The position numbers and the translations under genes were made by a program. DNA of 64,000 nucleotides, from positions 620,001 to 684,000 of the forward strand of contig NW_024704770.1 of assembly GCF_018977255.1 (NCBI RefSeq), written 5' to 3'. The notes below the pieces were generated by a model that was not told the DNA's origin, did no database searches, and saw only the letters and a program-made list of their open reading frames with translations. Positions 7,316 through 39,567 of this stretch are shown piece after piece; within the stretch, counting starts at the first letter, position 1; each line of letters opens with the position of its first letter. The DNA comes from Callorhinchus milii (taxonomy: Eukaryota).

Positions 7316-7350
<35 letters not shown>

Positions 7351-8497: not shown

Positions 8498-8623
8498 GGC
8501 ACCGAGTGCGGAGAGGGCAGGTGATGTCCACACTTGATGCCGTGTGTGTAACGCTGGGAACGCTGCTGGCCCTCGTGCTGATGGCACTCGCTGTACAAAT
8601 CAAACACAATGTGCCCAGAGGAG
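8498..8623 (+). CDS. WC1/SCART/CD163-like transmembrane exon, duplicated copy A (no cytoplasmic exons follow in this copy)
   Basis: cacaaag|GG...AGAGGAG|gtgaga, 126 nt, phase 1-1, GHRVRRGQVMSTLDAVCVTLGTLLALVLMALAVQIKHNVPRG. Same translation as 20883-21008. Confidence 0.65.
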
Positions 8624-9357
8624 GTGAGAGCCCGACACGTGCCCTGGAGTCAGGCGGAGCCGTGTGGGGAGTGAACTGTATCAGTTAGAGAATCGGTGAC
8701 AAGGGACAGTCACGGCACTGTTAGCAGAACAACAGCGGAGACTTTAGAGAAGATTTCTTCACTCACAGGATTGTTAGTGTCTGGAATTCTTTCCCATGTG
8801 GTATTGAGGCTGATCCACAAGATCACACAATGGTTTCGATGAAGAAGGCTCTTTGCCTCTTCCGATCTCATCTCTCCAGAACACCCACCCGAACATCAAC
8901 CCCCCCCCCCCACCAACCCCCCACCTCCATCACCAAATGGAGCTGCTTTTAACACAGGATACTCTTTGTGTTCGTCAAATAGAAATTGCCATTTCCTGTC
9001 GCGAGTATGTTCCAAGATGTTTGACTTTTGTGGCTTGGCCCCTGAGCTGGGGTTGGGTCCATGGGCGGGTGAGCCGGGGAAACATGATCAAAGTCATAGT
9101 CAAAGAGGAAGGTCTTGAGATGGGACTTTAAAGAGGTGAGGGAGGGCCCGAGTCTGAGGGATTCCAGGATGGAGTTCCAAATAGTGTGGGCAGATCGGCT
9201 GAAAGCCGGACCGCCAATGGTGAGGCGGGCAGGGCAGGGGATGTGAAGCAGACCAGTGCCCACTGAGCAGGAGTGGGCAGGATGGCAATGATTAAGGAGG
9301 TCACAGAAGTAGAGTGGAGCAAGACATTGGAGGGCTTTAAAGTGAGTACAAGGATCT

Positions 9358-10115
9358 CCTCCTCCACAACACCCTCTACTCCACACTTGACCCTCACCTC
9401 CCGTACTGTCTCCTGCTCTCGCTCCTCCCCTGGCTCACAACGCACCTCCGCTCATTGAAGAGCCAGGTGCGGGCCGTTGAATGCACCTGCCTCAAATCTG
9501 GGCTAACGGTCCACTGACAAATCTGGCTGGACCTCCTCAGAATCTATCACTCCACTCTAGCCTCGGCCAAGTCATCCTTCTACTCCAGGATAACTCTGGA
9601 GGCGAAGAACAACCCCAGGCTACTGTTTTCTACCACATCCTGACTCCTCCGTCCCCCCCGCCACCCCGCGCAGGTCATCTCCTCCACCCTTCACTACGAG
9701 GAGATGTTGGATTTCCTTGAATCCAAAATCAAGGGAATCCGCTCCATGGTCACTACCCGTCCAACTTCCACCCACCACCCACCCCTTCTCTCCCACACTC
9801 CAACTCCCACCCACCACCCACCCCTTCTCTCCCACACTCCAACTCCCACCCAGCCCCTCCCCTTCCCTCCCACACTCCGACTCCTACCCATCCTCCCCTA
9901 CACCCTTGGTCTCCTCCTCTTCACCCTCTATATGCTCCCCCTGTGGTGACATCATCCGCAGACATGGGGTTAACTTCCACATGTATGCGGATGACACCCA
10001 ACTCTACCGTTACTCCAAGGTCCTTGAAAGAGTTGTCACCTCCCAACTGCGCACTTTCCCCTCCAGCCGTGCATTATTCGAACCCCTTCAGTCGGGTTTC
10101 CGCGCTGCGCACAGC
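9358..10115 (+). mobile_element. Scrambled L2 LINE reverse-transcriptase fragments
   Basis: Translates to GDIIRRHGVNFHMYADDTQLY (YADD motif) and FEPLQSGFRAAHSTE, in rearranged order. Confidence 0.8.
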
Positions 10116-10251
10116 ACAGAACCATTCACTGTGAGTTCCTTTCGGTTCAAATTCCAAATAAAAACCTACAGTTCCACTTTGCTGCCGCCAGAGGGCGGTG
10201 TTGCACTGTGTGACTTCCCACCAGATTCTCAGTCACTTCACTTGTCCTCCT
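10116..10251 (+). repeat. ~136-bp element with CTCF-like core; inverted copy at 26448-26583
   Basis: Reverse-complement match with few mismatches. Contains ccgccagagggcggtgttg. Confidence 0.85.
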
Positions 10252-11566
10252 TGAGGGGAGGGGAGCAGTGTCTGTGTCTGTGTGTCTCTCTGTCTCCCTT
10301 ATAGGTATCTGAGATGGAGAGGAGACCCCCCCCTCCCCCCGCACACAGGGCTGTTGGAGAGGGAGAGGAGCCGCCATGGCCCCCACTCTCTCCTGGACTC
10401 CTCACTGTCGCTCTGATGGTCAGTGTGGATGAGGTGAAGGACACATGACTATCACTTGATGATCTTTGACCCTTATCTGTGTGTATTACCAGTTGTGTCC
10501 CTCTGTCCTGTGGACTGCATTGCACCCACAGAGAGGTGAGCAGCTCCTGCTCAGGAGCAGCATCTGTGATGGTGGAATCATTGCTCAATGGAGAGCGGTG
10601 TGTGGACCCACGACAAACAGCAAGATCATGGCACTGCTCCCACACATTTCATGCTGAGTTGTGTTGGCCACCAGAAGCTCGGAGGGAGTTACTCTAACCT
10701 GCCATCAGCCGAGTGAGGGCTGAAACCCGCACTTGTCTGATATCGAATGACAAACTGGACTGTGCGGCTCAGGACACATACGTGGGTGTCCATGGAGCTC
10801 AACTGGCTCCAAGTTAACAGCCTTCAAGACCTTTATGAAGTTACCACTGCAATCTCCTCAACCAGTAGTGACCTGCGTGCTTCCATCACCCAGCAAGCCT
10901 CGGCATGTTTAATGATCCCGCCCTACCGGTCCCACCATCAGGTCATGGGCTTTCGGCCAATCTGCCGCCCATCCTCTATAACTCAGCCCCAGAGAACCCT
11001 CAAACCCTTCATGAGGGGCACTTTATTGATGCAAATTGTTGTTGTTATTGTCTTTGAACCCAGGATTCACTCGCGCACACACCCCTTTACGGTCCGTATC
11101 AAGAGCTCCCGCATTGACCACATCCTTGTTTATGTTTCCCTTCCCTGACCCCATGTCGGGTCTCAATGATTCATGTTCAAGTGTCTGAATGTAATGTGTT
11201 TATAAACTCGATGAGATCCCATGCTCTATCCCTCATGAATTTGCTATATAGATGCAATTTATATTTCTTGTCATTTCTGTAAAACGTTTCAATAATGTTG
11301 TTCTGCTCGTTCTGTATTTAGTTTATTCGACGCTTTATTTTTTATGTATTTATCTTCAATTCACAATAACCAATGTAATCGAGTATAAGATGTGCAATTC
11401 TCAAGTGAATACATTATGTTGTTTGTTCACATGTCTGGAACTAATTGCATTTGTGATCCACGCTGTAGATTCGTTGCTTCAAGTACAAATGTCTTTGAGT
11501 GTGACCTCAGAGTGTTCATTGAAGCCTCTGCCTTCAGCCACACAATGTCGTAGTGTAAAACAGAGT

Positions 11567-11636: not shown

Positions 11637-13829
11637 GTATGTCTATTTGGTCACATTTATTAGCAATATTCAGTAGATTACTGCAATGGGCAGAAGAAGT
11701 TTTCTGAAGTGACATATCAGGTTATTCAAGTTGGTCGGGAAAAGGAGAGAGAGGAATATGTATTGAATATTGTAAGGTGCAGAGCAGCAAATGGATTGGG
11801 GAGTGCAGGTACATAAGTCCTTGAACATAGTGACATAAGTGGAAAAGACGGTGATTAAAGGTTTACAAAGATTTAGAAAAATTTACAAAGAAAGTACAAC
11901 ACAGAAACAGGCCACTCAGATCAACCAGTCCGTGCCGGTGTTTATAACCACTTGGGTCTTTACTCCCTCCCATAGCCTCTATTCCTCTCTCTCTCACGTG
12001 AAGGTCTATGTTCCTCGTGAATGCAGCGAATAAAATCATCGATTCAGGCAACAACTCCTGCCCTCTGTGTGAAGCAGTTTCTTCTCCTTGCCCTCTGCGG
12101 GGCAATCTCCCTCAATCTCTCTGCCCTCTGCGTGAAGCAGTTCCTTCTAATTTTTATTTTTTATCCCATCGTCACTGTCCCTGGTTACTGACTCCCCCAA
12201 AACAGCCCCAAATTGGCACAATCCTCACGACAGGATAGATCCCCAACTGTCGTTCCTACCCCACATCCCTGACCACAATCACTCGACTTCACGTCCACCC
12301 GTTGCCCACCTCAGACCCTGTCTCACACTCAACAGCTGAAACCCTCGTTGATTGACGGATTGATTTCAAAGTCCTGAATCTCACTCACAAATGAGTTTGG
12401 GTCCCAGCACCTCCTCAGGTCCCTACTTCTCTGACCTGCTTACACCACACAGCTCTAAGCCCTTTCACTCAGCTGCCTTGCCTTCGGCATGTCCCTTGCC
12501 CGCTTTGCTCTGCCATCGATGACTGGGGTTTCAGCCGCTACTCATCTCAAACTCTGGAACTCTCTGCCTCAATCCCACGACTGTGTTCCTCTAAGGTGAC
12601 AGAGACATAGCGCATTTGGGGATTGAAGAGGAAAGGAGATCAGTATATGAAGGATAGAGCCTCGAAAAGGTATGAGGGTAACAAGAGCAGCAAAGCTCAA
12701 TGCACACCTTCATCTGTCAGTCCGTGCAGACTCGATGGGCTGAATGGACTCCTTTGTGTTATACATTTCTCTGATTCTGTTATACCTTCTCTGAATTTGA
12801 ATGGGTTTCAAAACTGCCATAAGATATGTGGCTCTTAAACCAGGTTTTAGGAAAGTAACTGATTAAGTGTGAGTCTGGCTGACATGTCACACTGAGCCAT
12901 ATTGTACAGCAAAAGCTCCATACGTCGAATCATTCCTTGTGAAACAGATTTCTTTTTTAAAAAATTGGTATTTTCTGGTCTTCCACATCCCTATTATACA
13001 TAGAGAAGAGGCCTTAGAGTTCCAAAGCACAGTAGCAATAATGGGCAATGTGTTTTAACATAACGAGGGTTTATTTATATAATTCAGTGGTTAATTTTGC
13101 TTATTATGGATGATAAATAATTACACAAATTTATAAAATTGTTATTCGCCATTTCTTGGTTTACATATTTCATCTGATTTTTGAAACACTGTCGAAGTTA
13201 ACAAATTCAAAAATCATCACCGTTCCTCTTCGAATATTACGCAGTGGTTTCTTCAGTACCAGACTGCTATTTGCTGAGGTATTGTGCACTTGGTATATGT
13301 GAGAAGATAATAATAATAATCCTTCATTTAATAATTGGTATCAAGATGACATTTCAGAAAATCACTGGATTCTGCATTTTACAGGATGATAAAAATCCAA
13401 GAGAGGTCGGAACGTTAGGCCCAATTTGCTACTGCAAATAATGTATTGATTCAATAACGCTTACTGAATTACTAAAGGTGAGGCTATTCGGCATACGTGA
13501 ATGACACCTGCAAGTATTCTGGGATATGAACTGTGTTTGAAAGTGATTGAAACAGTATGAAGAAAACGCTGCCGAACATAACACAGATTTATATTTATAA
13601 TCAAACACTTTAATGCAAATGAATAATTCCCGTTGAATAATCAATAATCCTTTGAGGTTGTCCTTTGGCACTTTGCAGGATTTACGGTAAAATGCACGAA
13701 CTGTATTTGTGTACGAACATATTAGAAACAAATTAAAGACAACACAACAGAATATGATACAGCTTCACACTTTTTACCTCACAATTTCTATTGATATAAA
13801 TTATTTTTCTGTGCTATTGTTTCTCACAG

Positions 13830-14754
13830 TTAATTTGCTGGCAATTGTGATCCTGTCAAGAAGAAAGTGCGGTCTGTCCAAGTGCATCACTCGCTACTTG
13901 GTAGCAATGGCAGTGGCAGATCTCCTGGTTGTCCTTGTAGAATTATTGTTGAACAAAATTAACAATCTGTATTTCCCATTAAGTTTCTTATTCTATACTC
14001 CAGTGTGTAGTGTCAGACTTGTGCTGATGTCTGTAACACTCCACAGTTCTTTGTGGTTCACTGTCGCTTTCACTTTCGATCGTTTTCTAGCCATTTGCTC
14101 CCAAAAGTTGAAACCAAAATATTGCACAGAGAGAACGGCCACAGTGGTTATAGCAACGCTGTCTGTGTTTAGCTGCTCTGTGAGCATTCCGTGGTATTTT
14201 ACTCTTGATCCTTATGTTATAGTTAACGATATACCGTGGTACTGTGTCTTCAAATCAAACTATTATACGATGGCCTCCTGGAAAGTGTTTGAAAGGCTTC
14301 ACCGTGTTATTGCTCCCGTGTTTGGTTTTGCCTTGATTTTTGCCTGTTCAATGCTCTGATTATCAGGCACATACTGATGGCCAGTGATGTCCGCAGGAGC
14401 CTTCGATGTCAAAATCATTCTGAGAAAACTATTGATCCAGAGTTAGAAAACCGAAGAAAATCTGTCATCTTACTCTTTGCGATGTCGGGCAGTTTTATTC
14501 TGTTGTGGACCACTTTTATTGTATATTCCTTCAAATGGCAACTTTCCAATTTCAGTTATAGCGAAACTTTTGTCAATAACATGCGTTTTATCGTCCAAGA
14601 AACCGGAATCATGCTTCAAAGGATGAGTTGTTGTACCAACACCTGTATTTATGCAATGACTCAGACTAAGTTCAGAGAAGAGCTCAAGACAGGGTTAGTT
14701 TATCCATTTCATATCATTGCCGAATTAATGATAAAACATCGTAAACGCAGGTAA
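13830..14754 (+). pseudogene. GPCR copy B exon 2, frameshifted (+2 T at ~14337-14341)
   Basis: ttgatttttgcctg versus ttgatttgcctg in copy A. Exon is 925 nt versus 923 nt. The frame continues in ORF 14377-14754. Confidence 0.8.
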
Positions 14755-15225
14755 GAAAGAAGTTGGCTTCACACACTGTTGAACTTCAGGGACATTGGTG
14801 AATGTCTCCACAAGCAGAGACGCCTTCCAACATCATGAGCAGATATCAATAAAGCATCGTTTCCTTCCAAATCTTGTGACTATCTGTAAAGTTAAACTCC
14901 TGCCCCCGAAACATTGAAGTGAATGTCCTTTGACTTGATGAAGGAATGTTTGATTTTGGTTCAGGTGTGTGGAGTAAAGGAAAATACCCAATGTTTCGCT
15001 CTGCCCGGGAATCAAACCCATGTCCTCTCGCTTACGAGTCAAGCGCTCTAACCACTGAGCTACAGGACTCCACATTCTGCTGGTAATAAACGGGGAGAGA
15101 AGGTGCCTTTTGCCCTATAATATATAGTGAAGTGATGTGAGCCTCGACAGCGGAGGCCACGACCGGTGTCAGTGGGGACACACCGGCTCTCATTTCTCAC
15201 CGTGCAATTCTGTTATACTCTCCAG

Positions 15226-15470
15226 CAGCGACACACCTGGTGACAGCCTGACATGTGCACAACAGCCACGTGTGTGTGAGGTCCTGCAGGAGATGGTGGT
15301 TCCCCAACACGTGGTCAGGAGAGAAGGGCACAAACTGTCAGACCGGTGTCTTCACTGTGAGTCACTGGTGTTGGATCAAGTGGATGTACTGTCCACATCA
15401 AACTACTACTGTTGTTTCCTTCACTTCCCAAAGCATCTTCTCATGTGGGCGGTGAACAGCACCGACTCCG
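15226..15470 (+). CDS. Candidate internal exon (phase 2 to phase 1), copy B
   Basis: Same as 2760-3004, with the same splice sites. Confidence 0.35.
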
Positions 15471-17058
15471 GTAAAGCTTTCCCACTGCAACGGCATCTTT
15501 CACAGCATTTGTGATCTTTCAGACTGACTCTCCAGTGGCAGCACTGAGGTTTAGCACCGCATTGACCTTAAAATGACCATAACCCGCCCATACCCACCCA
15601 ACCCGCCACCATAACCCTCCCAACCCGCCCAACCCGCCACCATAACCCGCCCAACCCGCCCAACCCGCCACCATAACCCTCCCAACCCGCCCAACCCGCC
15701 ACCATAACCCGCCCAACCCGCCCAACCCGCCACCATAACCCGCCCAACCCGCCACCATAACCCGCCCAACCCGCCCAACCCGCCACCATAACCCGCCCAA
15801 CCCGCCCAACCCGCCACCATAACCCGCCCAACCCGCCCAACCCGCCACCATAACCCGCGCAACCCACCTATCCCTCTCCCCCCACCGGTCGCTCTTAGTC
15901 TCAGTGCATTTTTGCTGCCGTCACCGACAAGAGCTGTTACCCCAAAATGCTCCCACCCCCGTCCCCACCTCTGTGACCTCCTCACCCCCCACCAACCCGT
16001 CCGCTCCCTCTGCTCAGTGGCCTCCGGCCCCCGCCTCGCCAGCCTTCAGCCTCTCTGCCCCCACCCTTTGGAACTCCATCCGACTCCCACTCCGCCTCAC
16101 CCCCTCCTGTGCCTCTTTCAAGACCTGTCTCAAGACCCTCCTCCTGGACCGAGCCCCCACCCTCCGCGCCCTCCACCCCTCCTGATCCCAACCACCTGCC
16201 CGGGTGCGGATCCCTGACTGTCGGGCGCCTCGGACGTCCTCCTGACGTGAAAGGCGCTTTACAAATCTAATTTGTTATTGTTGTGTTTCTCACAATATCT
16301 GTGTCCCCGCACTTTCCGCCCCACCATTGGGTCGGACATTCAGCATCTCCGCCCCCACCCTGGAACTCCATCCCCAAATCCCTCCACCTCACCCCCTCTC
16401 TCACCTCCTTCAGGTCGCGTCTAAAGACCTTCCTCTTCGACCGTGACTTCAGCCCCAACTCCTGTCCTCCACCCCCAACCCCCGCCACGCCCTGCTCCAC
16501 CCCCAAACCCCAGCCCTCCACTCCCCAACCCCCCCTGCCCTCCACCCCCAACCCTCTGCTCTTCACCCCCAACCCCCCTACCCTCCACCTCCACCCCAAC
16601 CCCTGCCCTCCACCCCCAACCCCCTGCCCTCCACCCCCCCCCAACCCCCTGCCCTCCACCCCCAACCCCTGCCCCCACCCCAAACCTGCCCTCCACCCCC
16701 AAACCCCTGTGCTTCACCCCCAACTCCCAGCCGTTCACCCCTCCTGACCCCAATACCCAACTCAGGTCCAGTAACCCCTGACTGTCCAGTGCCCTGGAAC
16801 GTCTTTCTGACATGAAGAGCGCTTTACAATTGTCTGTAAAGTGTTGTTGTTGTTGTTGTTGTGTGTCCCAATATCTGTGTGTGTGTGGGAGGGGGTGGAG
16901 GGCCTTTTACACGGTTGGTGGTGGGAATGAGGAATTATCCCCTACAAACTGCAGTTGAGGCTGCGGCCGTTGATGGTTTATAAAAGAGAATGAGGCGGAT
17001 GATGGATGAGGGAATATTAAAGGCTTCTGGGCAGTGATCGCGGGAGAGACGAGGGCAG

Positions 17059-17350
17059 ACATTTCCTGAGGTTGTGGGCGGTTGCCATCAAACCCACACT
17101 GCCCGGCGGTGCTGCTCGTGTGCAGCTGTTCCCAACCGTTCACTCTGTCATTTGGAGCAAAGTGGTTGGTTTCGAGGCCTATGTTGTGGCCGTGAGCTGA
17201 TGCCCCAGTGCAGGCGGGGGAGCAGCGCCGTGTTGGGGAGGCCGACCTGTGGATGGGATGGTGACCTGAGGTCCTGTCTGACAGCTCCAGGAGATGTCAG
17301 AGATCCCAACACATACACCACACTGAGGACACTGAGGAAATAACCTGAGG
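17059..17350 (+). pseudogene. Decayed SRCR exon, copy B
   Basis: Same as 4566-4857. Confidence 0.45.
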
Positions 17351-19698
17351 CTTGTGGTTGGTAAGAAATCTGGAGACTGCGGTCTTTATTCAATGCTGCA
17401 TTTTTGATAACTTTAAACTATTTAAATGAGAAAAGCCATTGTGCGGTACAGGGGGGCACTGTGTGTGCTAATAACTAAAGGGGTGACGCTGTGGGGTGTG
17501 AATGGGGTGTGGGGTGTGTACTAGTTATGGTGAGTGTGTGTTATTCACGAGGGTTTGTGTGGTATTAATGTGGCAAATATGCTTTATAGCATTAAATATA
17601 CATAGGAATTGTGGGGTATTAATGGGGTGCGGGGTATCAATGGAGTTTGTGGTGTCAATGGAGTTTGTGGTATCAATGTGGTGTGTGGAGCATTAATGGG
17701 GTGTGTGGGGTATGGGGGGTATTTTGTGGTGTATGAATGGGATGTGGGGTGTGAATGGAGTGTGGGTTATTAATGGGGTTTCGGGTATTAATGGGTTGTT
17801 TGATGTAATAATGGGGTGTGGGGTATTAAGGGGGTGTGGGTAATTAATGAGGTGTGGGATATGAATTGGGTGTGGGGTATTATTGGAGTGTGGGCTATGA
17901 ATGGGTTTGATGTAATAATGGGGTGTGGGGTATTAATGGGGTGTGGGGTATTAATGGGTTGTTTGATGTAATAATGGGGTGTGGGGTATTAAGGTGATGT
18001 ATTAGGGTGTGGTATTAATGAGCTGTGGGATATTACTGGGGTATGTAGTGTTAATGAGGTCTGTATTATTAATGGGATGTGGGGGGTATTAATGGGGGTA
18101 TTGTGTGGGGGGTTATTAATGGGGTGTGGGGGGTATTAATGGGGTGTGGGGGGGGTATTAATGGGGTGTGGGGGGTATTAATGGGATGTGGTGATGTGTG
18201 GGAGGAATTGCCTCACAAGCGAGAGGACGTGGGTTTGATTTCCGGGCAGAGCAAAATGTTCGGCAATATTCCTCACTCCCACACACGCTGCTGTTTCCCG
18301 GCAGTGAGGAGCAGAACAATAATCCTTCAAACAAAATGTAAGAATCCCTTATTCCATGACTGTTTGTGGGACGCTGCTGTGCGCAATTGTCTGCCGTGTT
18401 TCGCCCACAAATTATACAGTCAATTGACTTTACAGTGCACTCTAAAGCACTTTGAGATGTCTCGAAGATGTGATAAGGCTCTGTAGCAAACGTAAGGATT
18501 ATTATTATATCTCAGTCAAAAGTGATCAGTGTAAATGTGTATTGTCTCCTCGCTGGGCCCCACTGTCTGCTCGTGCGTCAACTCCCCGACCCTCTTCCTG
18601 ACCTCAGATTCTTCATGGTCTCACTCCTTCCTACCCCGGCTGTCTCCGGCCTCGGCCTCTGCTCTGACACCTCTGCTCTACTGCTCACTGCTCTCTTCCT
18701 CCAGTGACGGCACCTTCAGCTTTTACTCTGGACGGTGCTCTACATTTCCCTCTCTCGAAAGACGTTTCTCTCTGACTCTGCATTTGGCCAACACCCTGAC
18801 CCCGTTTCCACTTTTGAAGCCACCCGCGGGTTTGCTCCTCCCTCCCTCTGCCCCCTATTAACAGCAAACCTTTCCACTCCCGCTCCCCCCGCTCCCCCCG
18901 CTCAGTGGGCACTGGGCTGTTGCATGTTCCCTGCTCTGCCGACTTATACAACAATAATAATAATTTTGTCACTCATTCCACTACTGCTTGTAGGGTAATA
19001 CCTCGTGCAATTAGCTGCCGTGTTTCTCCCACAAAATATATACAATTCACAGAATATTCTGTCAATCGCTTTGAGACAAATGTAAGGATTATTATTACTA
19101 TTACCCCCACACCACAGGGGTTGGGTGTTCAGCTTTGCTGCCCCCACCCTTTAGGACTCCATCCCAGAATCCCTACACCTCGCCCCCACGCTTCCTTCCT
19201 TCAAGGCACATCTCAAGACCTTTCTGTTGGACTGTGCCTTCAGTCTCCCTCCCACCCCCTACCCCCCACCCTTCTTCATTCCAACCCCCAGCTTGTGTGC
19301 AAATCATTAAATGTCCAGCGCCCTGGGACGTGCTTTGGAAAGGCCGTATTTAGATGTAATTTGTTATTGTTGTTTGTCTTCTTATTTGGGAATTCCCGTT
19401 GGCAGATGAAGTGTTTTGGGACTTTAATCGTCCAGGAAGGGTACTGTCTAACAGTACAAGTTGTGAAGAGTTTGAGACAGTCATTCATGAAAGGCGCTGT
19501 GTGAATAATAATAATTATAATAATAACAATAATCCTTGCATTTGATATAGAGCCTTATCACGTTGCTGCAACAGCTCAAAGCACTTCACAGGATATACTG
19601 TAAAGCGTAGTAACTGTGTGATTTTTGGGCAAAACGTTGTGTTAAGTTCTGAAATGCAGTCAGGTTTGTAAACTTGTCTGTAACACAAACTGATTTAA

Positions 19699-19732
<34 letters not shown>

Positions 19733-20882
19733 CCTCTCTGTGTAGCTGAGGCCTCCACTGCGATGTAAAACCAAGATAGCGACGGATTTAATCAGATTGG
19801 AAACTGCGGCTGGTGCTGAGCTAAAGAGCCTGTGGTGAGAGCTGTGTCTCTGGTCCCTTCTCCTGATCAGGTTAAACTTTACATTGAGCTGAAATGCCAT
19901 CTTATTACACTGACTTGATCAACACGTGATCTCTCAACCCAGGTCCTGGCAGCCACACACTTGAGGCAAATGTCTGATGGAAATGCACAGAGATTCTCTG
20001 ATCTCTACACAGTTACATGGTTTTGTCAGCGTGGCTCAGTTGGCTGCGTTCTTCCCTCTGAGTCAGATGTTTGTGGCTTCAAACCCCACGTCAGGATTTG
20101 GAACTCACATAGTCTAAGCTGGAATTCCAAAGCTGATGCTGGGAGTGCACTGCATTTGTTGAGGTGCCGTCCTTTGGATGAGATGTTAAACCAAGGCCCT
20201 GTCTGTCTGTTCAAATGGATCTTAACGATCCCACCATTGGGAAACAGGGGAGTTTCTCCCGGTGTCCTGGCCAACAATCCCCCCAAACATTGGCCACTCA
20301 CTTCATGGCTATGTGTGGGATGTTGCTGTGTGCAACTTAGCTGCTGTGTTCCCAATAAAGTGCAGTCCTATAGCTTAATGGTTTGATCGCTCGCCTGGCA
20401 AGCACCAGTACCTGGGTTCGATTCCTGGCACGGCAAAACCTTGGGCAAGTTTCCTTACGCCACACCCTCTGTCCTGCCTGAAGTCCTTCCTGTTCAGCAG
20501 TGCCTATGGTCACTTCGCGCCTCTTCCTGGTTCAGCAACATGTTCCGCCACTGTCAAGCGTTCTGGGACGCTATCCTGCGTGAGGGGCGCTATATATATA
20601 TATGCAAGTTGTTGTGTGTCTGTTTAATGTGGTGAGTGACAGTGTATGTTGTGGACATAAGCAGAAGCCAATTTGCAGACATCTGTGGAGTTAGTGACCA
20701 ACTCTGAGAGAACCTCATTGAGGTGTAAACATTTCAAATGGGATTCAAAATGTACAGTCACATACGGAGTATCTGTAAAGCTCATTGGGACTCCCTCCCA
20801 ATGTGAGACACTGCACCAAATGTCAGGACTATTGTTGTTGTTTTATTGCGATTTTGTGACTGTTATGTTTTGTGTCACAAAG

Positions 20883-21008
20883 GGCACCGAGTGCGGAGAG
20901 GGCAGGTGATGTCCACACTTGATGCCGTGTGTGTAACGCTGGGAACGCTGCTGGCCCTCGTGCTGATGGCACTCGCTGTACAAATCAAACACAATGTGCC
21001 CAGAGGAG
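20883..21008 (+). CDS. WC1/SCART/CD163-like receptor: transmembrane exon
   Basis: AG/GT sites, phase 1-1. CVTLGTLLALVLMALAVQ matches the CxxLGxLLxLVLxxLxxQ pattern I recall for WC1/SCART TM segments. Confidence 0.7.
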
Positions 21009-22393
21009 GTGAGAGCCCGACACGTGCCCTGGAGTCAGGCGGAGCCGTGTGGGGAGTGAACTGTATCAGTTAGAGAATCGGTGACAAGGGACAGTCACGG
21101 CACTGTTAGCAGAACAACAGCGGAGACTTTAGAGAAGATTTCTTCACTCACAGGATTGTTAGTGTCTGGAATTCTTTCCCATGTGGTATTGAGGCTGATC
21201 CACAAGATCACACAATGGTTTCGATGAAGAAGGCTCTTTGCCTCTTCCGATCTCATCTCTCCAGAACACCCACCCGAACATCAACCCCCACCCCCCCCAC
21301 CAACCCCCCACCTCCATCACCACATGGAGCTGCTTTTAACACAGGATACTCTTTGTGTTAGTCAAATAGAAATTGCCATTTCCTGTCGCGAGTATGTTCC
21401 AAGATGTTTGACTTTTGTGGCTTGGCCCCTGAGCTGGGGTTGGGTCCATGGGCGGGTGAGCCGGGGAAACATGATCAAAGTCATAGTCAAAGAGGAAGGT
21501 CTTGAGATGGGACTTTAAAGAGGTGAGGGAGGGCCCGAGTCTGAGGGATTCCAGGATGGAGTTCCAAATAGTGTGGGCAGATCGGCTGAAAGCCGGACCG
21601 CCAATGGTGAGGCGGGCAGGGCAGGGGATGTGAAGCAGACCAGTGCCCACTGAGCAGGAGTGGGCAGGATGGCAATGATTAAGGAGGTCACAGAAGTAGA
21701 GTGGAGCAAGACATTGGAGGGCTTTAAAGTGAGTACAAGGATCTTAAACTCGATCTTCTGGGGGATTGGAGTCAGTGGGTACAGATGAATGTGGGGGATG
21801 AGAGTGGGGGGAGATGTGGGGGATGGAGCCCAGTGGGAGAGAGTTCTGGATAGTAATGACTGGATGTGTTTGTATTTATATAGTGCGCTTCACATAGGAT
21901 AGTGTCTCGGCTAAAACATTAAGAGATGTGGGGCAGAGCCGGGACTTCAGACTCATGATAAAAACACAGAAATCCACAGGTAACAGATACAGGGGGTTAT
22001 GGCCTCCTGGGAATGTGGGATCTTCTGCCCCAACATTGGTTGAGGCAGATTCTGTGCTGCTTTTGATGGGAATTAAAATCCAGTAGTTACCCCAACCCAC
22101 ATGTCTTCGGTCCTGCGCCTAATACACTGTAGAATTTGGTAAGTGGGTCATCGCTCCAGTGAGAGACAACACATTTCATTCCAATAAATATCTCAGGAAT
22201 TTCCAAGTGTAGTTGGGATACATGGAGTTCTCGATTTCGTTTGGATGCTCTTGCGCATAGTGACTGGGTTTCCGCATGTGTCAGACGCCCGGGTGACCAA
22301 AAAATATTCCCCATAAGGGAACAGCCCAAGTGCTTTGAGAATGTTCTTACATGAGGTGCTGTAAAATACCAGGATTATTCTTTATGATTCCAG

Positions 22394-22498
22394 GGACTAA
22401 AGGCCGAAGATATGTGTCTCTTGGTTCACATCAAGGACTTTACGCAGAAATCGATGACCACCTGCCCAGGAGAGGCTCCCGTCAGCCACGACCTTCAT
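22394..22498 (+). CDS. WC1-like receptor: cytoplasmic exon with paired tyrosine motifs
   Basis: gattccag|GG...TCAT|gtgggt, 105 nt, phase 1-1, GTKGRRYVSLGSHQGLYAEIDDHLPRRGSRQPRPS. LYAEID resembles WC1 VYEELD. Confidence 0.7.
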
Positions 22499-23129
22499 GT
22501 GGGTATTTTACAAACTGTGTTTGACATCGCGGAGGAGGGAAAATTGTGATGTTTCCAAACGCATTGTGTGAAAATAGTGACATTGAGTGTGTTCTGTCCC
22601 TGTGGACCTCAGTGACTGATGACGCTGCTGTCAGGTGTCACACACTTTGTTTGGCGAAAGAAGTTTAATCCCAAACTGAGCATTAAGTGCATCACAAAAA
22701 CAGGTGCATTTTCTGTCTTGTGTAAATTCGCACATCGATGGCCTGAACTTCTGGGACCCAAAGACTGATAGAGTTAATGTCAGTTTGATGGGTATTTTAG
22801 TCAGGGTTCAGTATTCAGTGAGAGGAGAACATCTTCACTAAAAACTGGCAGCGAGTGAGGAACCACAGACATCACATCTAAACCTTGATCCGCAATCTAA
22901 ACATATTTATTATTACTAATGTTCTGTACAGATATCTCTCACAGAATAATAATTATTATTAATATTCTCTGCTCTGATATCTCACACACACTGAATATTT
23001 AATATTATTAACATTCTCTGCTCTGATATCATCCACTGATTATTTAATCTTATCAATGTTTTGTGCTCTGATATTTGATGAAATTCCCCTCTAACCTGGT
23101 AATGAACGGTGTGTGTTTCTTTTGGACAG

Positions 23130-23174
23130 TGTCTGGACCCAACAATTCTCTGTGGAAGCTGGAATATTACACAG
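23130..23174 (+). CDS. WC1-like receptor: short cytoplasmic exon (LSGPNNSLWKLEYYT)
   Basis: ttttggacag|TG...ACAG|gtaaaa, 45 nt, phase 1-1. Confidence 0.65.
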
Positions 23175-23829
23175 GTAAAAGGTTAAAAACAGAAACACAC
23201 ACTTGTTTGTCTGCAGTGAAGAGAGAGAGAGAGAGAAAACAATATTTTTCAGCATTTTATCAGGTCTCAGTGCCGTCTGACAGCACTTTACAGCGATCGC
23301 TGCTGTGTGACGGTCTCCTGTGGGCAAACACAGTGAGGTGCTGAGCACAGGCAGAGGGTGAAGGAACATTAATGTGGGGGATGTTGGCCCCGGACACTGG
23401 GAGAAACATTCTTCTCTTTTCCCGTAGCTTCACAGGATGTTTCCCGCACTCCTGCACAGGCAGACAGTGATTCCCCATTAAAACACAGACCATCCACTTG
23501 GGGTCTGAAAGGGCTGAGGCCCAAACCTGTCATTATACACAGCGACAACGACAGGTTATAGTGTAGAGTCCTGCACTTGGGTTAGAGCCCTCCCCGAGCA
23601 GCGAGAGACCACAGCCCCATTCCCGGGCAGGTCAACACCTCAGGCAAGTTTCCTTACTCCACACTCCAACGAGGAACCCGGTTGTTCGTGGATTGGAGGA
23701 TCGCTTTCCGGCGGTAAAAATCCCTTCAATGAATGAATGAATGAATCAATCAGTTGATCAGTGAGTGAGTGAGTGAATCAGAAAGTAAATAAACAGATTA
23801 TTTAATGAATGAATTGACCATCGAATCCA

Positions 23830-24322
23830 CGGCTTTGTGGCTTTGTGGCGGTTTGTGGCTTTGTGGCTTTTTGGCGGTTTGTGGCTTTGTGGCTTTGTGG
23901 CGGTTTGTGGCTTTGTGGCGGTTTGTGGCTTTGTGGCTTTGTGGCGGTTTGTGGCTTTGTGGCTTTGTGGCAGTTTGTGGCTTTGTGGCGGTTTGTGGCT
24001 TTGTGGCGGTTTGTGGCTTTGTGGCAGTTTGTGGCTTTGTGGCTTTGTGGCGGTTTGTGGCTTTGTGGCGGTTTGTGGCTTTGTGGCGGTTTGTGGCTTT
24101 GTGGCGGTTTGTGGCTTTGTGGCGGTTTGTGGCTTTGTGGCTTTGTGGCGGTTTGTGGCTTTGTGGCTTTGTGGCGGTTTGTGGCTTTGTGGCGGTTTGT
24201 GGCTTTGTGGCTTTGTGGCTTTGTGGCGGTTTGTGGCGGTTTGTGGCTTTGTGGCTTTGTGGCGGTTTGTGGCTTTGTGGCGGTTTGTGGCTTTGTGGCG
24301 GTTTGTGGCTTTGTGGCGGTTT
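23830..24322. repeat. Intronic minisatellite of gtggcttt / gtggcggttt modules
   Basis: Direct tandem 8- and 10-mer modules. Confidence 0.95.
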
Positions 24323-24429
24323 GAGGAACGGAGTGGGTTAAGAAATGGCGGTTGTGCCGTTGGGTGTTGTTCAGTGACCACTTTGCTGCCGCTGCTCGGG
24401 TTCAATGTCCATCTGTTCTTGTCTGACAG

Positions 24430-25118
24430 GTGACGGCTCCTCATCTGCTCATAACTCCCAGGACCAGGAATCTGTGTGTAACTCCATGACCAGTGACGCC
24501 GCGTGTAACCCCGTGACCAGTGACGCCGCGTGTAACCCCGTGACCAGTGACCCCGCGTGTAACCCCGGGAGCATTGACGCCGCATGTAACTCCGTGTCCA
24601 GTAACCCTGCATGTAACCCCGTGACCAGTGACGCCGCGTGTAACCCCGTGACCAGTGACCCCGCGTTTAACCCCGTGACCAGTGACGCCGCGTGTAGCCC
24701 TGTGATCAGTGACGCCGCGTGTTGCCCCATGACCAGTGACGCCGCGTGTAACCCCGTGACCAGTGACGCCGCGTGTTGCCCCGTGACCAGTGACCCCGCG
24801 TGTAGCCCCGTGACCAGTGACGGCGCGTGTTGCCCCGTGACCAGTGACGCCGCATGTTGCCCCGTGACCAGTGACGCCGCGTGTAACCCCGTGACCAGTG
24901 ACGCCGCGTGTTGCCCCGTGACCAGTGACGCCGCGTGTTGCCCCGTGACCAGTGACGCCGCGTGTTGCCCCGTGACCAGTGACGCCGCGTGTTGCCCCGT
25001 GACCAGCGGTGCTGTTACTCACACAGGGACACCTCGGGCTGAAGTGACGGTGTCGGCCATTGCCCATTGTCATGGCCGGGATGAGGATGAGGATGTTCTG
25101 CCTCTGTCCCCACAGTGA
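24430..25118 (+). CDS. WC1-like receptor: terminal exon with 19 x 27-bp coding repeat (VTSDAAC[N/C/S]P)
   Basis: Acceptor cttgtctgacag|GT, phase 1, in frame with the preceding exon. Open to TGA at 25116-25118. Repeat spans 24486-24998. Confidence 0.6.
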
Positions 25119-25299
25119 GAACGGAGCCACTGAATCCCCTCAGTGTGAAGCGCCGCTGTCGTTCTGAGCGTTTCCTCTGCACCAAATACCCACTGTGACC
25201 ATCAGTGGCCAAAGCACTGAGTCCGTCAGATCTTTAATAGCGACGCTTGAACTGGAGACATTTCAAAGGGGTTCTGCGGGGGGAGGGGTGGGGGTGGGG

Positions 25300-25605
25300 G
25301 AGTGTGTGGGGGGGCAGTGTGTGGGGGGGGGCAGTGTGTGGGTGGGGGCAGTGTGTGTATTTGGGGGGGGGCAGTGTGTGGGGGGGCAGTGTGTGGGGGG
25401 GGGTGGAGCAGTGTGTGGGGGGTGGAGCAGTGTGTGTGTGTGGGGGGCAGTGTGTGGGGGGGGGGACAGTGTGTGGGGGGGGCAGTGTGTGTGTGGGGGG
25501 GCAGTGTGTGGTGGGGGGCAGTGTGTGGGGGGCAGTGTGTGGGGGGGCAGTGTGAGGGGCAGTGTGGGGGGGGCAGTGTGTGGGGGGCAGTGTGGGGGGG
25601 TAATG
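25300..25605. repeat. cagtgtgtggggggg minisatellite
   Basis: Imperfect tandem repeats. Confidence 0.9.
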
Positions 25606-26447
25606 GCGGGGGGGGGAGGGGGAGTAGCCGAGGTGTCTCGTGGCACAGACGAGAAGATCTGAATGGGGTTTCCGTGGTGGACATTCAGTGGTCGAGCGCC
25701 TGAGGCTCAGGTCATTGTGACTGACGGCTTCACACAGACGCGGCTTTGCTGATAATATTTGAGTCCAATTGGTTCTGTTTGTAACGAGACTTGAACTGCG
25801 TTTCTTTAAAGGGTAAACGCTTCTCACATTTCCGGTGGACAAAGCTGTCAAAAAGCCAATGAAATTTTCGGTGTATAAACGGTTTTGCTTTTGTGGTTTG
25901 GGTTAAAATCCTCACTTTGGGACATCCTTCTGACGGCGAAGGCTCTGTACTCGTCAGCGCTTCTTTTTGCCGATCGCTTTGCGAATATAACTGTGGAGTA
26001 GATTTTATATGATGTAAAATAAAACTTTCTCATAAACCTCCCGACTGAGCGTTACGTATGTTTTACAGATAGAGACCGACATTTTGCTCACAAAATACAC
26101 AGTCACTACACTTTACAGTGCAGTCCGTGAAGCGCTTTGAGACGTCTCAAAGATGTGATAATATCAAAGATGAGATCGGGCGCTTTCTCAATAATAATAA
26201 TCGTCGCATTTGAACGCGACTCAGGAACCTGACGGCCGAGACCTCCACAGGGGCCGCGCTCGATTCTGACCAAACATGTCACCTTGGGGCCAGTTCAGCT
26301 CCATGGAGACCCCTCACACCCCCCGCCCACGGACAACAGTCACCACACGGTGTTTGACATCCGACAAGTCCCTTTGAGCCCCCACTGGGTGGACGGCCGG
26401 TACCAGGAGCTCCTGTGGGCTTCACGGTGGGCAACACGGCTCAGTGG

Positions 26448-27193: not shown

Positions 27194-27385
27194 NNNNNNN
27201 NNNNNNNNNNNNNNNNNNNNNNNNNNNNNNNNNNNNNNNNNNNNNNNNNNNNNNNNNNNNNNNNNNNNNNNNNNNNNNNNNNNNNNNNNNNNNNNNNNNN
27301 NNNNNNNNNNNNNNNNNNNNNNNNNNNNNNNNNNNNNNNNNNNNNNNNNNNNNNNNNNNNNNNNNNNNNNNNNNNNNNNNNNNNN
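27194..27385. other. Assembly gap within a ccctgccccg repeat
   Basis: Run of N. Confidence 1.
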
Positions 27386-27952
27386 CCTACCCAGCCCTGC
27401 CCCGCCCTGCCCCGCCCAGCCCTGCCCTGCCCCTGCCCTGCCCCGCCCTGCCCCGCCCTGCCCGGCCCAGTGGACTAACCATGTCTCGCTGAGCCCTCCT
27501 GTCCGCTCCGAGTCTCAGAGTGTGCACATTGGCTGCTGCAATGGACCTGAGCTGTTACGGTCAATTGTCAATTGAACTCCCGCTCCACCCTCCTCTCCCT
27601 CCGCTGCCCCAACTCCTGACCCTCCTCGACTCCCCCACGGCCTCCCTCTGCTCCTCCCTTCACATCCTTTGTTGTGCCCACCGTGGTGCACACCGTCGGC
27701 TGTCTGACAGCGCCTGTGCTGATTGCCCCTTCCCCCACTCTCACCGCAAGGCCACCGGCCCTCACTCACGGGAGCCAACCTGTCCTCCCTCACTCACATC
27801 CCCATCCAACCCGTCTGCCCACCCCCTCCCACCCCTCATCCCTCGGCCGTTCCCCTCCCCCTCCGGAGCCCAACGCCTTGGGATGTCCTCCCGATGTGAA
27901 AAGCGCTATACAAATGTAATATTGTTGTATACTTTCGTCCCCGACCCCAACC

Positions 27953-28716
27953 GTCAGTGCAACCGAGTCATTCTTATCGAAGGATGGAATGTCTCTGTGT
28001 GTTTAATGTTAGAGAGCACACGGCTGAGGTCCAGTCCTCCATCTCCTCCCCCACCAACTGCTTCCGATGTTAAAAACAGGTGACAGATCAATAAACCCTC
28101 AGTGACATCACAGCCCATCACAGGGGCAGAGGAAGGACCACACGGCTCCTGTCGCTGTAATACCGCGTTCAGCCACAGAGGGCGGTGTTGCACTGCGGAG
28201 CCAACAATTCACAGCCAACACCGCCCTCTGCTGGTCACACCCCCTCCTCACCCTCACCAGCCCCGCCCCCTCCCCACCCAGCCCCGCCCCCTCCCCACCC
28301 AGCCCCGCCCCCTCCCCACCCAGCCCCGCCCCCTCCCCACCCAGCCCCGCCCCCTCCTCACCCAGCCCCGCCCCCTCCCCACCAGCCCCGCCCCCTCCCC
28401 ACCCAGCCCCGCCCCCTCCTCACCCAGCCCCGCCCCTCCTCACCCAGCCCCGCCCCCTCCACACCCAGCCCCGCCCCCTCCCCACCCAGCCCTCCCCCCC
28501 GCCCCCTCCCCACCCAGCCCTGCCCCCCGCCCCCCCCCCCGCCCCCCTCCACCCAGCCCCCCTCATCACAGCCCCGCCCCCTCCACACAGCCCGCCCCCT
28601 CCTCACCAGCCCGCCCCCTCCACACCCCGTCCTCCCCACCTCACACAGCCCCTCCCCCTCCTCACACAGCCCCTCCCCCTCCTCACACAGCCCCTCCCCC
28701 TCCTCACACAGCCCCT
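27953..28716 (+). repeat. Left arm of the inverted repeat bracketing the IgM locus (~300 bp unique plus GC-box minisatellite)
   Basis: Reverse complement of 53316 to ~52140. Contains AGTGACATCA (28101-28110), a 15-bp inverted pair (28176-28190 / 28216-28230) and (cccacccagccccgccccct)n. Confidence 0.9.
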
Positions 28717-35793: not shown

Positions 35794-36304
35794 CTGGAAA
35801 ATAAAAGTAAAGATATGATGAATAATTTTAGCCTGGGTGGAGAGTTAGTATTTAAGCTGTGTTTATTGGTGTATATATCTCCACACATGCACACCAGCAA
35901 ACTCACACACAAACACATGCACACACACAAACACACACAAGTCCAATTGATACTGTATGAATGGGTTTGGAGCTGCCGGGGACTGACACAGGCAGAAACC
36001 CTTCTCTCGGCGGCTTTAAAGTGTCCACAATACATCAAAAGATCCACATAATGTGTAAATGAGTCTTGCCCCTGGCCTGTGTCTATACCAGGTGAGCATA
36101 TGTCAGGTGTAATGGGGTGTGTAAGGTGATAGGATATGTTCATCGCCCTCACACAGTCTGGTCACAGGGATACCTGCCCTATAGGGACAGGGGCAGTGTC
36201 CCAGCAGTGGCTGCAATGAGCATCACTGTCATGTTCCCATGGAACAAGTATTTAACAGCAGCTGTCACATCACATCAGGGCCTCAATGAATTTACTCTCC
36301 TCAC

Positions 36305-36435
36305 CTTAATTAGAGTGATGGCTGCGCTGTATAAAATACTCAGGAAGAAGAGAATGATGAAGGTGGAAGCAGTTGGCCAGAGGTTACCACTTCCATCTTC
36401 TAGAAAACCTTCCAGCATCATCTCGTTTGGGTACT
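36305..36435 (-). CDS. IGHM: IgM membrane exon TM1
   Basis: ctcacag|AG...ATTAAG|gtgagg. EYPNEMMLEGFLEDGSGNLWPTASTFIILFFLSILYSAAITLIK carries the conserved antigen-receptor TM (CART) residues. Confidence 0.95.
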
Positions 36436-37329
36436 CTGTGAGGATAAAAAAAGAAGAAATATATTGAGATGGGTTTGAAATCTGAAACTTTTCTTCTTTT
36501 CCCTGTTTGAGTATTAATGTGTACAAAGTTTCCCAGTTGATCATGGGTTCCCTCCCTCTATTGATCCACAAGACGTCTCCTGCCAGTTATTGCAAGCCTT
36601 TGATTTTCAGGGAAATAAAGAAAAAATTGATGGTATTGTTTGTTTATTTGTTCAGAAAAAGTATTGAATTCAGAGGAGAATTTTGGGAACACTTTGAGAA
36701 AATTGAATTTGTGGAATTTCAGAATGAAATCCTCCCACTGAGACTCTGTTGGTAGAAAAAGGACAGATCTTCCCCAATCCTCCAATTCCACCTTCCTGCC
36801 CTGTTTTTCTACACGATCATACAGTAACAACAACAACAACAAAATTACATTTATATAGCGCCTTTCACGTCGGGAGGATGTCCCAAGGTGCTGGACAGAC
36901 AGAGTTAAGGACCCGAGCTGAAGGTCGGTGAGGGGGAGGGGGAAGGGCAGAGGGTGACGTACAGAGATCGAAAGCATGATCAAAGAGAAGGGTCTTGAGG
37001 TGGGTCATGAAGATGACAAGGGAGGGGGCAGAACGAAGGGACTGCGGGATGGACTTCCAGAGGGTGGGTGCAGAGTGGCGGAAGGCCCACCCGCCGATAC
37101 TGAGGCGAGCGAGGCGGGGTACGTGATGCAGGCCAGAGCCCACTGAGCGGAGAGATCAAACAGAATGGAGAGGATGAGGAGGTCAGTGAGGTAGGGGGGG
37201 AGCAACAGCATGGAGGGCTTTGATGGGAGGACCAGTATCTTAAACTGTATCCACTGTGTGATGGGAAGCCGGTGGAGTTGGGCAACGTGACACCGTCATT
37301 AATCAAATAGCAATTCACATTCCTCTACA

Positions 37330-39472: not shown

Positions 39473-39478
39473 TTTATT
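39473..39478 (-). promoter_or_regulatory. Poly(A) signal for secreted IgM mRNA
   Basis: AATAAA on the minus strand ~90 nt after the secretory stop. Confidence 0.7.
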
Positions 39479-39567
39479 TGAGTTAATTTTTCGGAACTCC
39501 CAACTGACAATGCAATGGTCGGGAGGCGGGTGCACAAAAGGCTAAGCAAAATGGTATTGAGCGACGC

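What the first reader, a model, noticed from the sequence alone, without database searches (positions are those of the whole stretch)
20883..25118. Hidden WC1/SCART/CD163-like receptor 3' half with an ITAM-spaced tyrosine pair, next to an IgM minilocus
Seen: four exons with canonical AG/GT, all joined in phase 1, splice into one frame: RVRR-...-CVTLGTLLALVLMALAVQ (TM)-...RRYVSLGSHQGLYAEIDD...-LSGPNNSLWKLEYYT-GDGSS...repeat tail. YVSL-x6-YAEI fits the established ITAM consensus YxxL/I-x6-8-YxxL/I. The TM and YxEI/LD pattern resembles the bovine gamma-delta T-cell co-receptor WC1 family (from memory). An RxRR furin-type site precedes the TM, suggesting ectodomain shedding. Inference: a cartilaginous-fish WC1-like signalling receptor with its own activation motif, not visible in single-ORF annotation.
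Basis: partly seen in the sequence, partly recalled or inferred. Interest (0 to 1): 0.8.

Follow-up and report, generated by a model that had tools for sequence, protein, structure and literature searches.

The report
Unannotated membrane-tail exons, family unproven
Four small exon-like pieces beside a shark-type antibody gene do join into a membrane anchor plus a tail with an activation-type tyrosine pair, and a related copy elsewhere in the genome is transcribed, but nothing shows that it belongs to the WC1/SCART/CD163 scavenger-receptor family or that this copy is used.

Summary
The literal observation holds. Segments 20883-21008, 22394-22498, 23130-23174 and 24430-25118 are AG/GT-bounded and phase 1. 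They join into one frame with a 21-residue membrane helix, RVRR, YVSL-x6-YAEI and a stop at 25116.

Sequence alone is not beyond chance. Such chains of 4 or more arise in half of simulated 64-kb sequences.

Support from outside the window is thin:
- A DNA run holds roughly 85%-identical copies of exons 1 and 3, and extra depth over exon 2 suggests a third.
- One low-depth RNA contig of a paralog matches exon 1 exactly from border to border.

Against this copy being a working WC1-like receptor:
- No SRCR or other ectodomain exon lies in the 20.9 kb upstream.
- Exon 1 sits in a 12.5-kb tandem duplication with GPR139/142-like GPCR ORFs.
- Exon 4 is a 27-bp minisatellite with no coding constraint.
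- No RNA covers exons 1-3 in four runs, and no RNA run in the index holds exon 1.
- No protein resembles exon 1, 2 or 4.
- YAEI misses the family's Y-(Q/E)-(D/C/E)-(I/L) motif at +1.

Best reading: a real but unannotated membrane-tail gene family, family unresolved, with this copy silent or decaying. An in-frame ATG five codons before the helix allows an adaptor without an ectodomain. The scan did not note these exons on other DNA.

The parts
20883..21008 (+). Exon 1 (copy 2). Short N-terminal flank with RVRR (20888-20899), an in-frame ATG at 20909, a membrane helix at 20924-20986 and a basic stop-transfer flank.
   Evidence: In one search, RNA contig X6 record 17 (180 nt) matches 20882-21009 only, with 19 differences and 25 and 27 nt of unmatched flanks. 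DNA contig X2 record 10 is a paralog of about 85% identity.
8498..8623 (+). Exon 1 (copy 1), inside the first unit of the tandem duplication. It is followed by no copy of exons 2-4.
   Evidence: 1-9357 matches 12475-21744. (278 nt around the exon are identical in both copies)..
22394..22498 (+). Exon 2, the membrane-proximal tail, with YVSL-x6-YAEI at 22411-22452.
   Evidence: In one search, extra DNA depth from a paralog appears to be confined to roughly 22380-22508; this is my estimate from 81-nt depth bins.
23130..23174 (+). Exon 3, 15 codons, containing LEYYT.
   Evidence: In one search, paralog DNA contig X2 record 16 matches 23077-23210 with 22 differences.
24430..25118 (+). Putative last exon. 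A unique start, then 19 units of a 27-bp minisatellite (about 24477-24989) coding a 9-residue repeat, then an acidic end and TGA. This is the weakest part of the model.
   Evidence: No similar protein of 125-399 aa. No Pfam match.
12475..21744 (.). Second unit of a tandem segmental duplication (the first unit is 1-9357; 94-98% identity). It carries a GPR139/142-like GPCR ORF and exon 1, and it ends inside intron 1.
23820..24325 (.). Microsatellite-like repeat that fills most of intron 3.
26018..26023 (+). First AATAAA after the stop codon, 900 nt downstream. A possible polyadenylation signal, untested.

Best explanation
Exons 1-3 are most likely genuine exons of a low-copy gene family that gene models miss. 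The genome is a cartilaginous fish, apparently the elephant shark.

The encoded part is a single membrane-spanning helix, oriented N-out and C-in, followed by a tail made of small phase-1 exons. The tail carries two YxxL/I tyrosines six residues apart.

If it is expressed, the inferred mechanism is the usual one for such tails. Src-family kinases phosphorylate the tyrosines after clustering, and a tandem-SH2 kinase (Syk or ZAP-70) or a single-SH2 partner docks on them.

The copy in this window is probably silent, narrowly expressed or decaying.
- Its anchor exon has been duplicated in tandem together with GPCR ORFs, one of them frameshifted.
- No ectodomain exon lies within 20.9 kb upstream.
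- Its last exon is an unconstrained minisatellite.
- No RNA was found for it.

What the outer part of the protein is cannot be decided from this window. It could be SRCR, immunoglobulin-type, or absent.

Shown: the frame, the motifs, the duplication, the paralogs and one border-exact RNA contig.
Inferred: membrane orientation, phosphorylation, signalling, and the status of this copy.
For: - The frame and motifs are verified.
- Splice signals are good.
- At 80% likeness, RNA run X6 has a 180-nt contig that matches 20882-21009 and nothing else. It has 25 and 27 nt of unmatched flanks. The genomic paralog in DNA run X2 stays alignable 76 nt further upstream, so the RNA contig looks spliced at exactly the predicted borders.
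- X2 has contigs about 85% identical over exons 1 and 3. Extra depth over exon 2 fades within about 15 nt of the exon by my estimate from depth bins.
- Copy number is low, so this is not a transposon (X2 depth).
- Positive charge is greater after the helix than before it (sequence).
- Against this copy being in use.
Against: - The RNA support is one contig of depth 2.4 from a paralog, and I could not read its sequence.
- No junction was seen.
- By sequence statistics alone the chain is not unusual.
- No protein in very large collections resembles exon 1, including any model of the paralog.
- In exon 1 the paralog is no better conserved than its immediate flanks (about 15% against 14% divergence).
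- Two exact-match contigs of RNA run X1 lie in the introns (22736-22917 and 23251-23422), not on the exons. This looks like DNA carry-over or unspliced RNA.
Confidence: 0.5

Rival explanations
1. One reading: this is the 3' half of a WC1/SCART/CD163-type group B SRCR receptor. Its SRCR exons would lie upstream of the window, with the GPCR ORFs and the duplication sitting in a long intron.
For: - The layout matches bovine WC1: a membrane exon followed by several small tail exons. WC1 has one membrane exon and a tail of 4-6 exons (PMC2681482).
- YAEI followed by acidic residues resembles the phosphorylated Y-(Q/E)-(D/C/E)-(I/L) motif (PMC2906472).
- From memory only, the helix resembles the WC1 helix. 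This is a lead, not a test.
- Earlier notes of this scan report an intact WC1/SCART-like gene elsewhere in this genome (unchecked).
Against: - No SRCR-like ORF was found in the window by a motif scan, and ten of the larger upstream ORFs have no Pfam domain. An intron of more than 20.9 kb would be needed.
- No hit of exon 1 in 1.84 billion representatives, which should include SRCR receptors.
- Position +1 of the motif is Ala, not Gln or Glu.
- Phase-1 small exons are common to nearly all immune type I receptors, so the layout does not discriminate.
Confidence: 0.12
2. This is a small transmembrane adaptor with no ectodomain. Translation starts at the in-frame ATG at 20909 (8524 in copy 1), five codons before the helix. 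The upstream exon seen in the paralog RNA would be non-coding. The product would work like LAT/NTAL-type adaptors or like DAP12/FcR-gamma, as a membrane-anchored tyrosine scaffold.
For: - The in-frame ATG has a purine at -3.
- This reading explains why no ectodomain or signal-peptide exon is found in 20.9 kb upstream.
- With this start the charge balance strongly favours N-out, C-in.
- The tail has three tyrosine sites.
Against: - There is no juxtamembrane CxxC palmitoylation motif of the LAT type.
- No small protein of 48-154 aa shares words with exon 1.
- The reading frame also stays open upstream of the ATG back to the acceptor, so the start cannot be told from the sequence.
Confidence: 0.15
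3. There is no gene. The chain is a chance set of open AG/GT-bounded segments in repeat-rich intergenic DNA between a GPCR array and an antibody cluster. The paralogous matches are only an older segmental duplicate, and the RNA contig is background.
For: - Chains of 4 or more arise in 50% of simulated windows.
- A membrane-like ORF plus an ITAM pattern arises in 22%.
- The window is one of very many scanned.
- Exon 4 is a minisatellite.
- There is no RNA on the exons and no homolog.
Against: - The RNA contig ends within 1 nt of both predicted borders of exon 1, while the genomic paralog continues to match.
- Paralog similarity around exon 2 appears confined to the exon, by my estimate from depth bins.
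- All four frames have stayed open in a region that is otherwise full of decayed repeats.
Confidence: 0.23

Closest known systems
WC1 / SCART (CD163c-alpha) / CD163 group B SRCR receptors
   Same: - Single-pass anchor on its own exon, with the tail split into small exons, as in bovine WC1 (PMC2681482).
- A Y-x-E-I tyrosine followed by acidic residues, near the conserved phosphorylated motif (PMC2906472).
   Different: - No SRCR exon in the window.
- No detectable sequence similarity.
- Position +1 of the motif is Ala.
- A second tyrosine at ITAM spacing, which the two WC1/CD163 papers I read (PMC2906472, PMC2681482) do not describe as a family feature.
- A minisatellite-coded tail.
Receptors with an ITAM in their own chain, for example Fc-gamma-RIIA and CEACAM3. 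CEACAM-like ITAM receptors are noted elsewhere in this genome by earlier notes of this scan (unchecked).
   Same: A type I layout with an activation-type tyrosine pair in the receptor's own tail, rather than in a partner chain.
   Different: - Here the whole pair lies in one exon. In the CEACAM-like genes the earlier notes describe it as split over micro-exons.
- The spacing is the minimal 6 residues.
- Basic rather than acidic residues precede the first tyrosine.
- The ectodomain is unknown.
ITAM adaptors DAP12, FcR-gamma and CD3-zeta
   Same: A very short outer part, a cysteine and an aspartate near the outer end of the helix, and an ITAM-pattern tail (comparison from established knowledge of these proteins).
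   Different: - The Asp lies at the edge of the helix, not inside it.
- The order of Cys and Asp is reversed.
- No similarity to the sequences of solved structures.
- Those adaptors have 7-residue spacing.
Transmembrane adaptor proteins of the LAT/NTAL/LIME type
   Same: A possible start codon a few residues before the helix, no ectodomain, and a tyrosine-bearing tail.
   Different: No juxtamembrane CxxC, and far fewer tyrosine motifs.

Membership tests
CD163 / WC1 / SCART (group B SRCR receptors) | One or more group B SRCR domains, each on its own exon, upstream of the membrane exon | tested here: inconclusive
   A motif scan of all ORFs of 60 aa or more found no SRCR-like ORF in the window. 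Ten of the larger plus-strand ORFs upstream of exon 1 have no Pfam domain. Only 20.9 kb upstream is available, half of it a duplicate, so exons further upstream cannot be excluded.
CD163 / WC1 / SCART (group B SRCR receptors) | Sequence similarity of the membrane region and tail to family members | tested here: not met
   Exon 1 gave no hit at E 0.001 or better among 1.84 billion representatives. Exons 1 and 2 gave no match in Pfam or PDB sequences. The power of 34-41-residue queries is low. The spliced peptide could not be submitted because it has no reference.
CD163 / WC1 / SCART (group B SRCR receptors) | Conserved tail motif Y-(Q/E)-(D/C/E)-(I/L) (PMC2906472) | tested here: not met
   The sequence reads Y-A-E-I. 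Positions +2 and +3 fit, but +1 is Ala. This is a near miss.
CD163 / WC1 / SCART (group B SRCR receptors) | Membrane region on a single exon and the tail on several small exons (WC1: 4-6; PMC2681482) | tested here: met
   One membrane exon plus three tail exons, all phase 1. This feature is shared with many other immune receptor genes.
ITAM-bearing signalling chains | YxxL/I, then 6-8 residues, then YxxL/I, on the cytoplasmic side of the helix | tested here: met
   YVSL, six residues, YAEI, at nt 22411-22452 and 16 residues after the helix. The pattern alone occurs about 2.7 times per random 64 kb in six frames.
ITAM-bearing signalling chains | Tyrosines are phosphorylated and bind the tandem SH2 domains of Syk or ZAP-70 | not testable with these tools
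   This needs a phosphopeptide binding assay or a cell assay.
ITAM-bearing signalling chains | The gene is expressed (in immune cells) | tested here: not met
   No depth on exons 1-3 of this locus in RNA runs X1, X6, X7 and X10. No indexed RNA run holds exon 1 words. Only a paralog contig was seen. Tissues of the runs are unknown, and contigs show presence, not absence.
Transmembrane adaptor proteins (LAT type) | Start codon just before the helix, with no signal peptide or ectodomain | tested here: inconclusive
   There is an in-frame ATG at 20909, five codons before the helix. The frame is also open upstream of it.
Transmembrane adaptor proteins (LAT type) | Juxtamembrane CxxC palmitoylation motif | tested here: not met
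   After the helix the sequence is basic and has no cysteine.

The most novel reading that the evidence does not exclude
Cartilaginous fish may have an undescribed, unannotated family of small membrane adaptors without an ectodomain. These would carry a complete ITAM-type tyrosine pair in one exon, be encoded beside antibody heavy-chain clusters, and serve as a signalling partner distinct from CD79, DAP12, FcR-gamma and CD3-zeta.
Probability: 0.1. Interest if true: 0.6.

Novelty: new member of a known kind. Interest (0 to 1): 0.3.

Why it matters
If the family is real and expressed, it adds an immune-type signalling chain to the oldest jawed-vertebrate lineage that gene models have missed. That bears on how early activation motifs were placed in receptor chains or adaptors.

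If it were shown to be SRCR-linked, it would place a WC1/SCART-type co-receptor tail with an ITAM-spaced pair in a chimaera. That would interest those who study gamma-delta T-cell co-receptors.

As it stands, the copy in this window is more likely a silent or decaying duplicate. The finding is a lead to the expressed paralog rather than a result.

Tried and rejected
- RNA at this locus. Laying RNA runs on 20500-23800 at 92% likeness gave no depth on the exons and only repeat-derived joints. A second index search with exon 1 alone found DNA-type runs only.
- Protein searches, all empty. Exon 4 against candidates of 125-399 aa. Exon 1 by phmmer against 1.84 billion representatives. Exon 1 region against candidates of 48-154 aa. 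Pfam on exons 1, 2 and 4. The protein atlas on exons 1 and 2 gave only chance-level hits below 0.85. PDB sequences gave one E 9.8 chance hit to a phycobilisome linker.
- Search for the paralog locus. I fetched the two elephant-shark GPR139/142-like gene loci on record (L001, L002). Neither holds exon 1-3 relatives. No database protein equals the window's GPCR ORFs, so annotated gene calls around the exons could not be retrieved.
- Search for a signal-peptide first exon upstream. Nothing was found with strict settings. With loose settings the only strong candidate is the ATG inside exon 1 itself.
- Candidate upstream phase-1 segment 19553-19663 (copy 1: 7169-7279). It has no Pfam match and is treated as noise.
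- The supplement of PMC2906472 holds accession numbers only, no tail sequences.
- Rejected: exon 1 as part of a transposon, because DNA depth is low-copy.
- Rejected: exon 4 as constrained coding sequence.
- Not done: a search with the spliced exon 1-3 peptide. It has no reference and I did not type it in.
Full report
**What is in the sequence.** I read 20700-25300 and joined the four proposed segments in a script.
- Every segment is preceded by AG. The first three are followed by GT.
- Their lengths are 126, 105, 45 and 689 nt, so every junction is phase 1.
- Only one frame is open through all of them.
- Exon 1 reads: a short basic flank with RVRR, an in-frame Met, a 21-residue hydrophobic helix (nt 20924-20986) and a basic stop-transfer stretch.
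- Exon 2 carries YVSL, six residues, then YAEI followed by two Asp (nt 22411-22452).
- Exon 3 has LEYYT.
- Exon 4 has a short unique start, 19 units of a 9-residue repeat, an acidic end and TGA at 25116-25118.

**Surroundings.**
- A self-comparison shows that 1-9357 and 12475-21744 are two units of a tandem duplication, 94-98% identical. The window starts inside a unit, so its full extent is unknown.
- Each unit carries a rhodopsin-family GPCR ORF (Pfam 7tm_1). Its best database relatives are cartilaginous-fish proteins named probable GPR139 or GPR142, with elephant-shark proteins on top at 79% and 69% identity.
- The first GPCR copy has no Met before its first helix. The second is split over two frames.
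- Each unit also carries exon 1. The copies at 8498-8623 and 20883-21008 are identical over 278 nt.
- The duplication ends inside intron 1, so exons 2-4 exist once.
- The antibody heavy-chain cluster is on the opposite strand at 36.3-48.6 kb, with one V-set and four C1-set exons. It converges on the candidate gene.
- Earlier notes of this scan call the genome elephant shark and report GPR139-like arrays beside other IgM clusters. The GPCR hits agree with that species.

**No outer domain.**
- A motif scan of all stop-free segments of 60 residues or more, on both strands, found nothing SRCR-like.
- Ten of the larger plus-strand ORFs upstream of exon 1 have no Pfam domain, apart from a weak reverse-transcriptase trace.
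- A scan for a start codon plus hydrophobic leader ending in a phase-1 donor found nothing strict.
- With loose settings, the only strong candidate is the ATG inside exon 1 itself, five codons before the helix.
- So there are three options: the outer-domain exons lie more than 20.9 kb upstream, this copy lacks them, or the protein has no ectodomain.

**Is it more than chance?**
- The donors are in the top 4% of GT sites by a simple consensus count. The acceptors are in the top 9-17% of AG sites by pyrimidine content.
- With those thresholds the window has 35 candidate phase-1 segments on the plus strand. Chains of 3 or more occur only at this locus and, on the minus strand, at the true antibody constant exons.
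- In 150 third-order Markov simulations of 64 kb, however, chains of 4 or more occur in 50%.
- An ITAM-pattern match occurs 2.7 times per simulated window in six frames. One lies within 3 kb downstream of a membrane-like ORF in 22% of simulations, before any splice constraint.
- Given how many windows are scanned, the sequence alone does not establish a gene.

**Exon 4.** It is a 27-bp minisatellite, open in 4 of 6 frames. Differences among its units fall 17, 15 and 5 on codon positions 1, 2 and 3. They give 25 non-synonymous against 4 synonymous codon changes. This is no sign of coding constraint. No protein of 125-399 residues resembles it.

**RNA and paralogs.**
- The run index gave RNA-type runs of the same species from 2011, 2013 and 2022, and DNA-type runs from 2025.
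- At 92% likeness, RNA runs X1, X6 and X10 have zero depth on exons 1, 2 and 3. DNA run X2 covers the stretch evenly at about 30.
- X1 has two exact-match contigs inside introns 2 and 3 (22736-22917 and 23251-23422). This points to DNA carry-over or unspliced RNA, not to the exons.
- A second index search with exon 1 alone found DNA-type runs only.
- At 80% likeness, X2 shows further contigs of normal depth: one over 20807-21025 with 32 differences, and one over 23077-23210 with 22 differences.
- X2 also shows extra depth over exon 2 that fades within about 15 nt of the exon. That figure is my estimate from depth bins; no exon 2 contig is listed. The genome therefore holds a relative of about 85% identity for exons 1 and 3, and probably for exon 2.
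- In RNA run X6, a 180-nt contig of depth 2.4 matches 20882-21009 only. It has 19 differences and leaves 25 and 27 nt unmatched at its ends.
- The genomic paralog stays alignable for 76 nt upstream of the exon. The one extra matched base on each side is a G, which a neighbouring exon could supply by chance; on the 3' side exon 2 does begin with G. So the contig behaves like a spliced message that uses exactly the predicted borders.
- This is the only positive evidence for transcription. It concerns the paralog, not this locus. I could not read the contig's letters, and low-ranked joints were cut from the table.

**Family.**
- phmmer of exon 1 against 1.84 billion representatives found nothing at E 0.001 or better.
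- A word-based search of the exon 1 region found no candidate.
- Pfam, the protein atlas and PDB sequences gave nothing meaningful.
- Such short queries have little reach. An identical or 80%-identical model would still have been found, so neither this gene nor its paralog seems to be in the protein collections.
- The literature gives two testable family marks.
  - WC1 has one membrane exon and a tail of 4-6 small exons (PMC2681482). This locus meets that mark, but so do many immune receptor genes.
  - WC1 and CD163c-alpha share a phosphorylated Y-(Q/E)-(D/C/E)-(I/L) motif (PMC2906472). YAEI misses it at +1.
- The defining SRCR exons are not in the window. I therefore do not file it under WC1/SCART/CD163. 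I also cannot exclude that family.

**Mechanism.**
- If expressed, the product is a single-pass protein with its tail inside the cell, because more basic residues follow the helix than precede it.
- By analogy with every known tail of this pattern, the two tyrosines would be phosphorylated by Src-family kinases on clustering. They would then recruit a tandem-SH2 kinase, or single-SH2 partners at YAEI, which is close to the preferred Src-family SH2 ligand.
- All of this is inference.
- The RVRR site would allow furin cleavage only if it is translated and luminal. With a start at the downstream ATG it would be untranslated.

**Verdict.**
- The exon model for exons 1-3 is probably right for a small gene family that annotation misses.
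- Exon 4 is doubtful.
- The copy in this window shows no use.
- The WC1-like label rests on resemblance only and failed the tests I could run.
- The scan did not note these exons on other DNA. I found no paper on such a gene in cartilaginous fish.

Noticed in passing
window 1353-2285 (+), 13691-14751 (+), 57084-58025 (-): Three intronless rhodopsin-family GPCR ORFs of the cartilaginous-fish GPR139/142-like expansion. The first has no Met before its first helix within the ORF. The second is split over two frames near 14340. None equals a protein in the collections, and the best match is 79% identical.
   Followed up: partly
window 1-9357 and 12475-21744: A tandem segmental duplication, 94% identical in its first part and 98% in its second. 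It starts at or before the first base of the window, so more units may lie upstream.
   Followed up: partly
window 36278-48558 (-): A complete-looking antibody heavy-chain cluster: a V-set exon at 48151-48558, four C1-set exons at 41782-42381, 41003-41386, 40257-40790 and 39571-39981, and a membrane exon within 36278-36586. Assembly gaps lie at 38521-38881 between the last constant exon and the membrane exon.
   Followed up: partly
window 22736-22917 and 23251-23422: Two contigs of RNA run X1 match these intronic stretches almost exactly (1 and 0 differences, depth 2.5-5.9), while the exons have no depth. This could be unspliced RNA, an antisense transcript or DNA carry-over.
   Followed up: no
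window 27937-28716 and 52542-53332: An inverted pair of proline-codon-rich repeat blocks, 88% identical. They flank the antibody cluster region at a distance of about 24 kb.
   Followed up: no
window 9594-10301 (+): An ORF with a weak reverse-transcriptase trace (Pfam RVT_1, E 0.037), in the unique spacer between the two duplication units. Probably a decayed retroelement.
   Followed up: no
window 25260-25700: A G-rich repeat block directly after the putative stop codon. It is open in several frames on both strands, and an assembly gap follows at 27194-27385.
   Followed up: no
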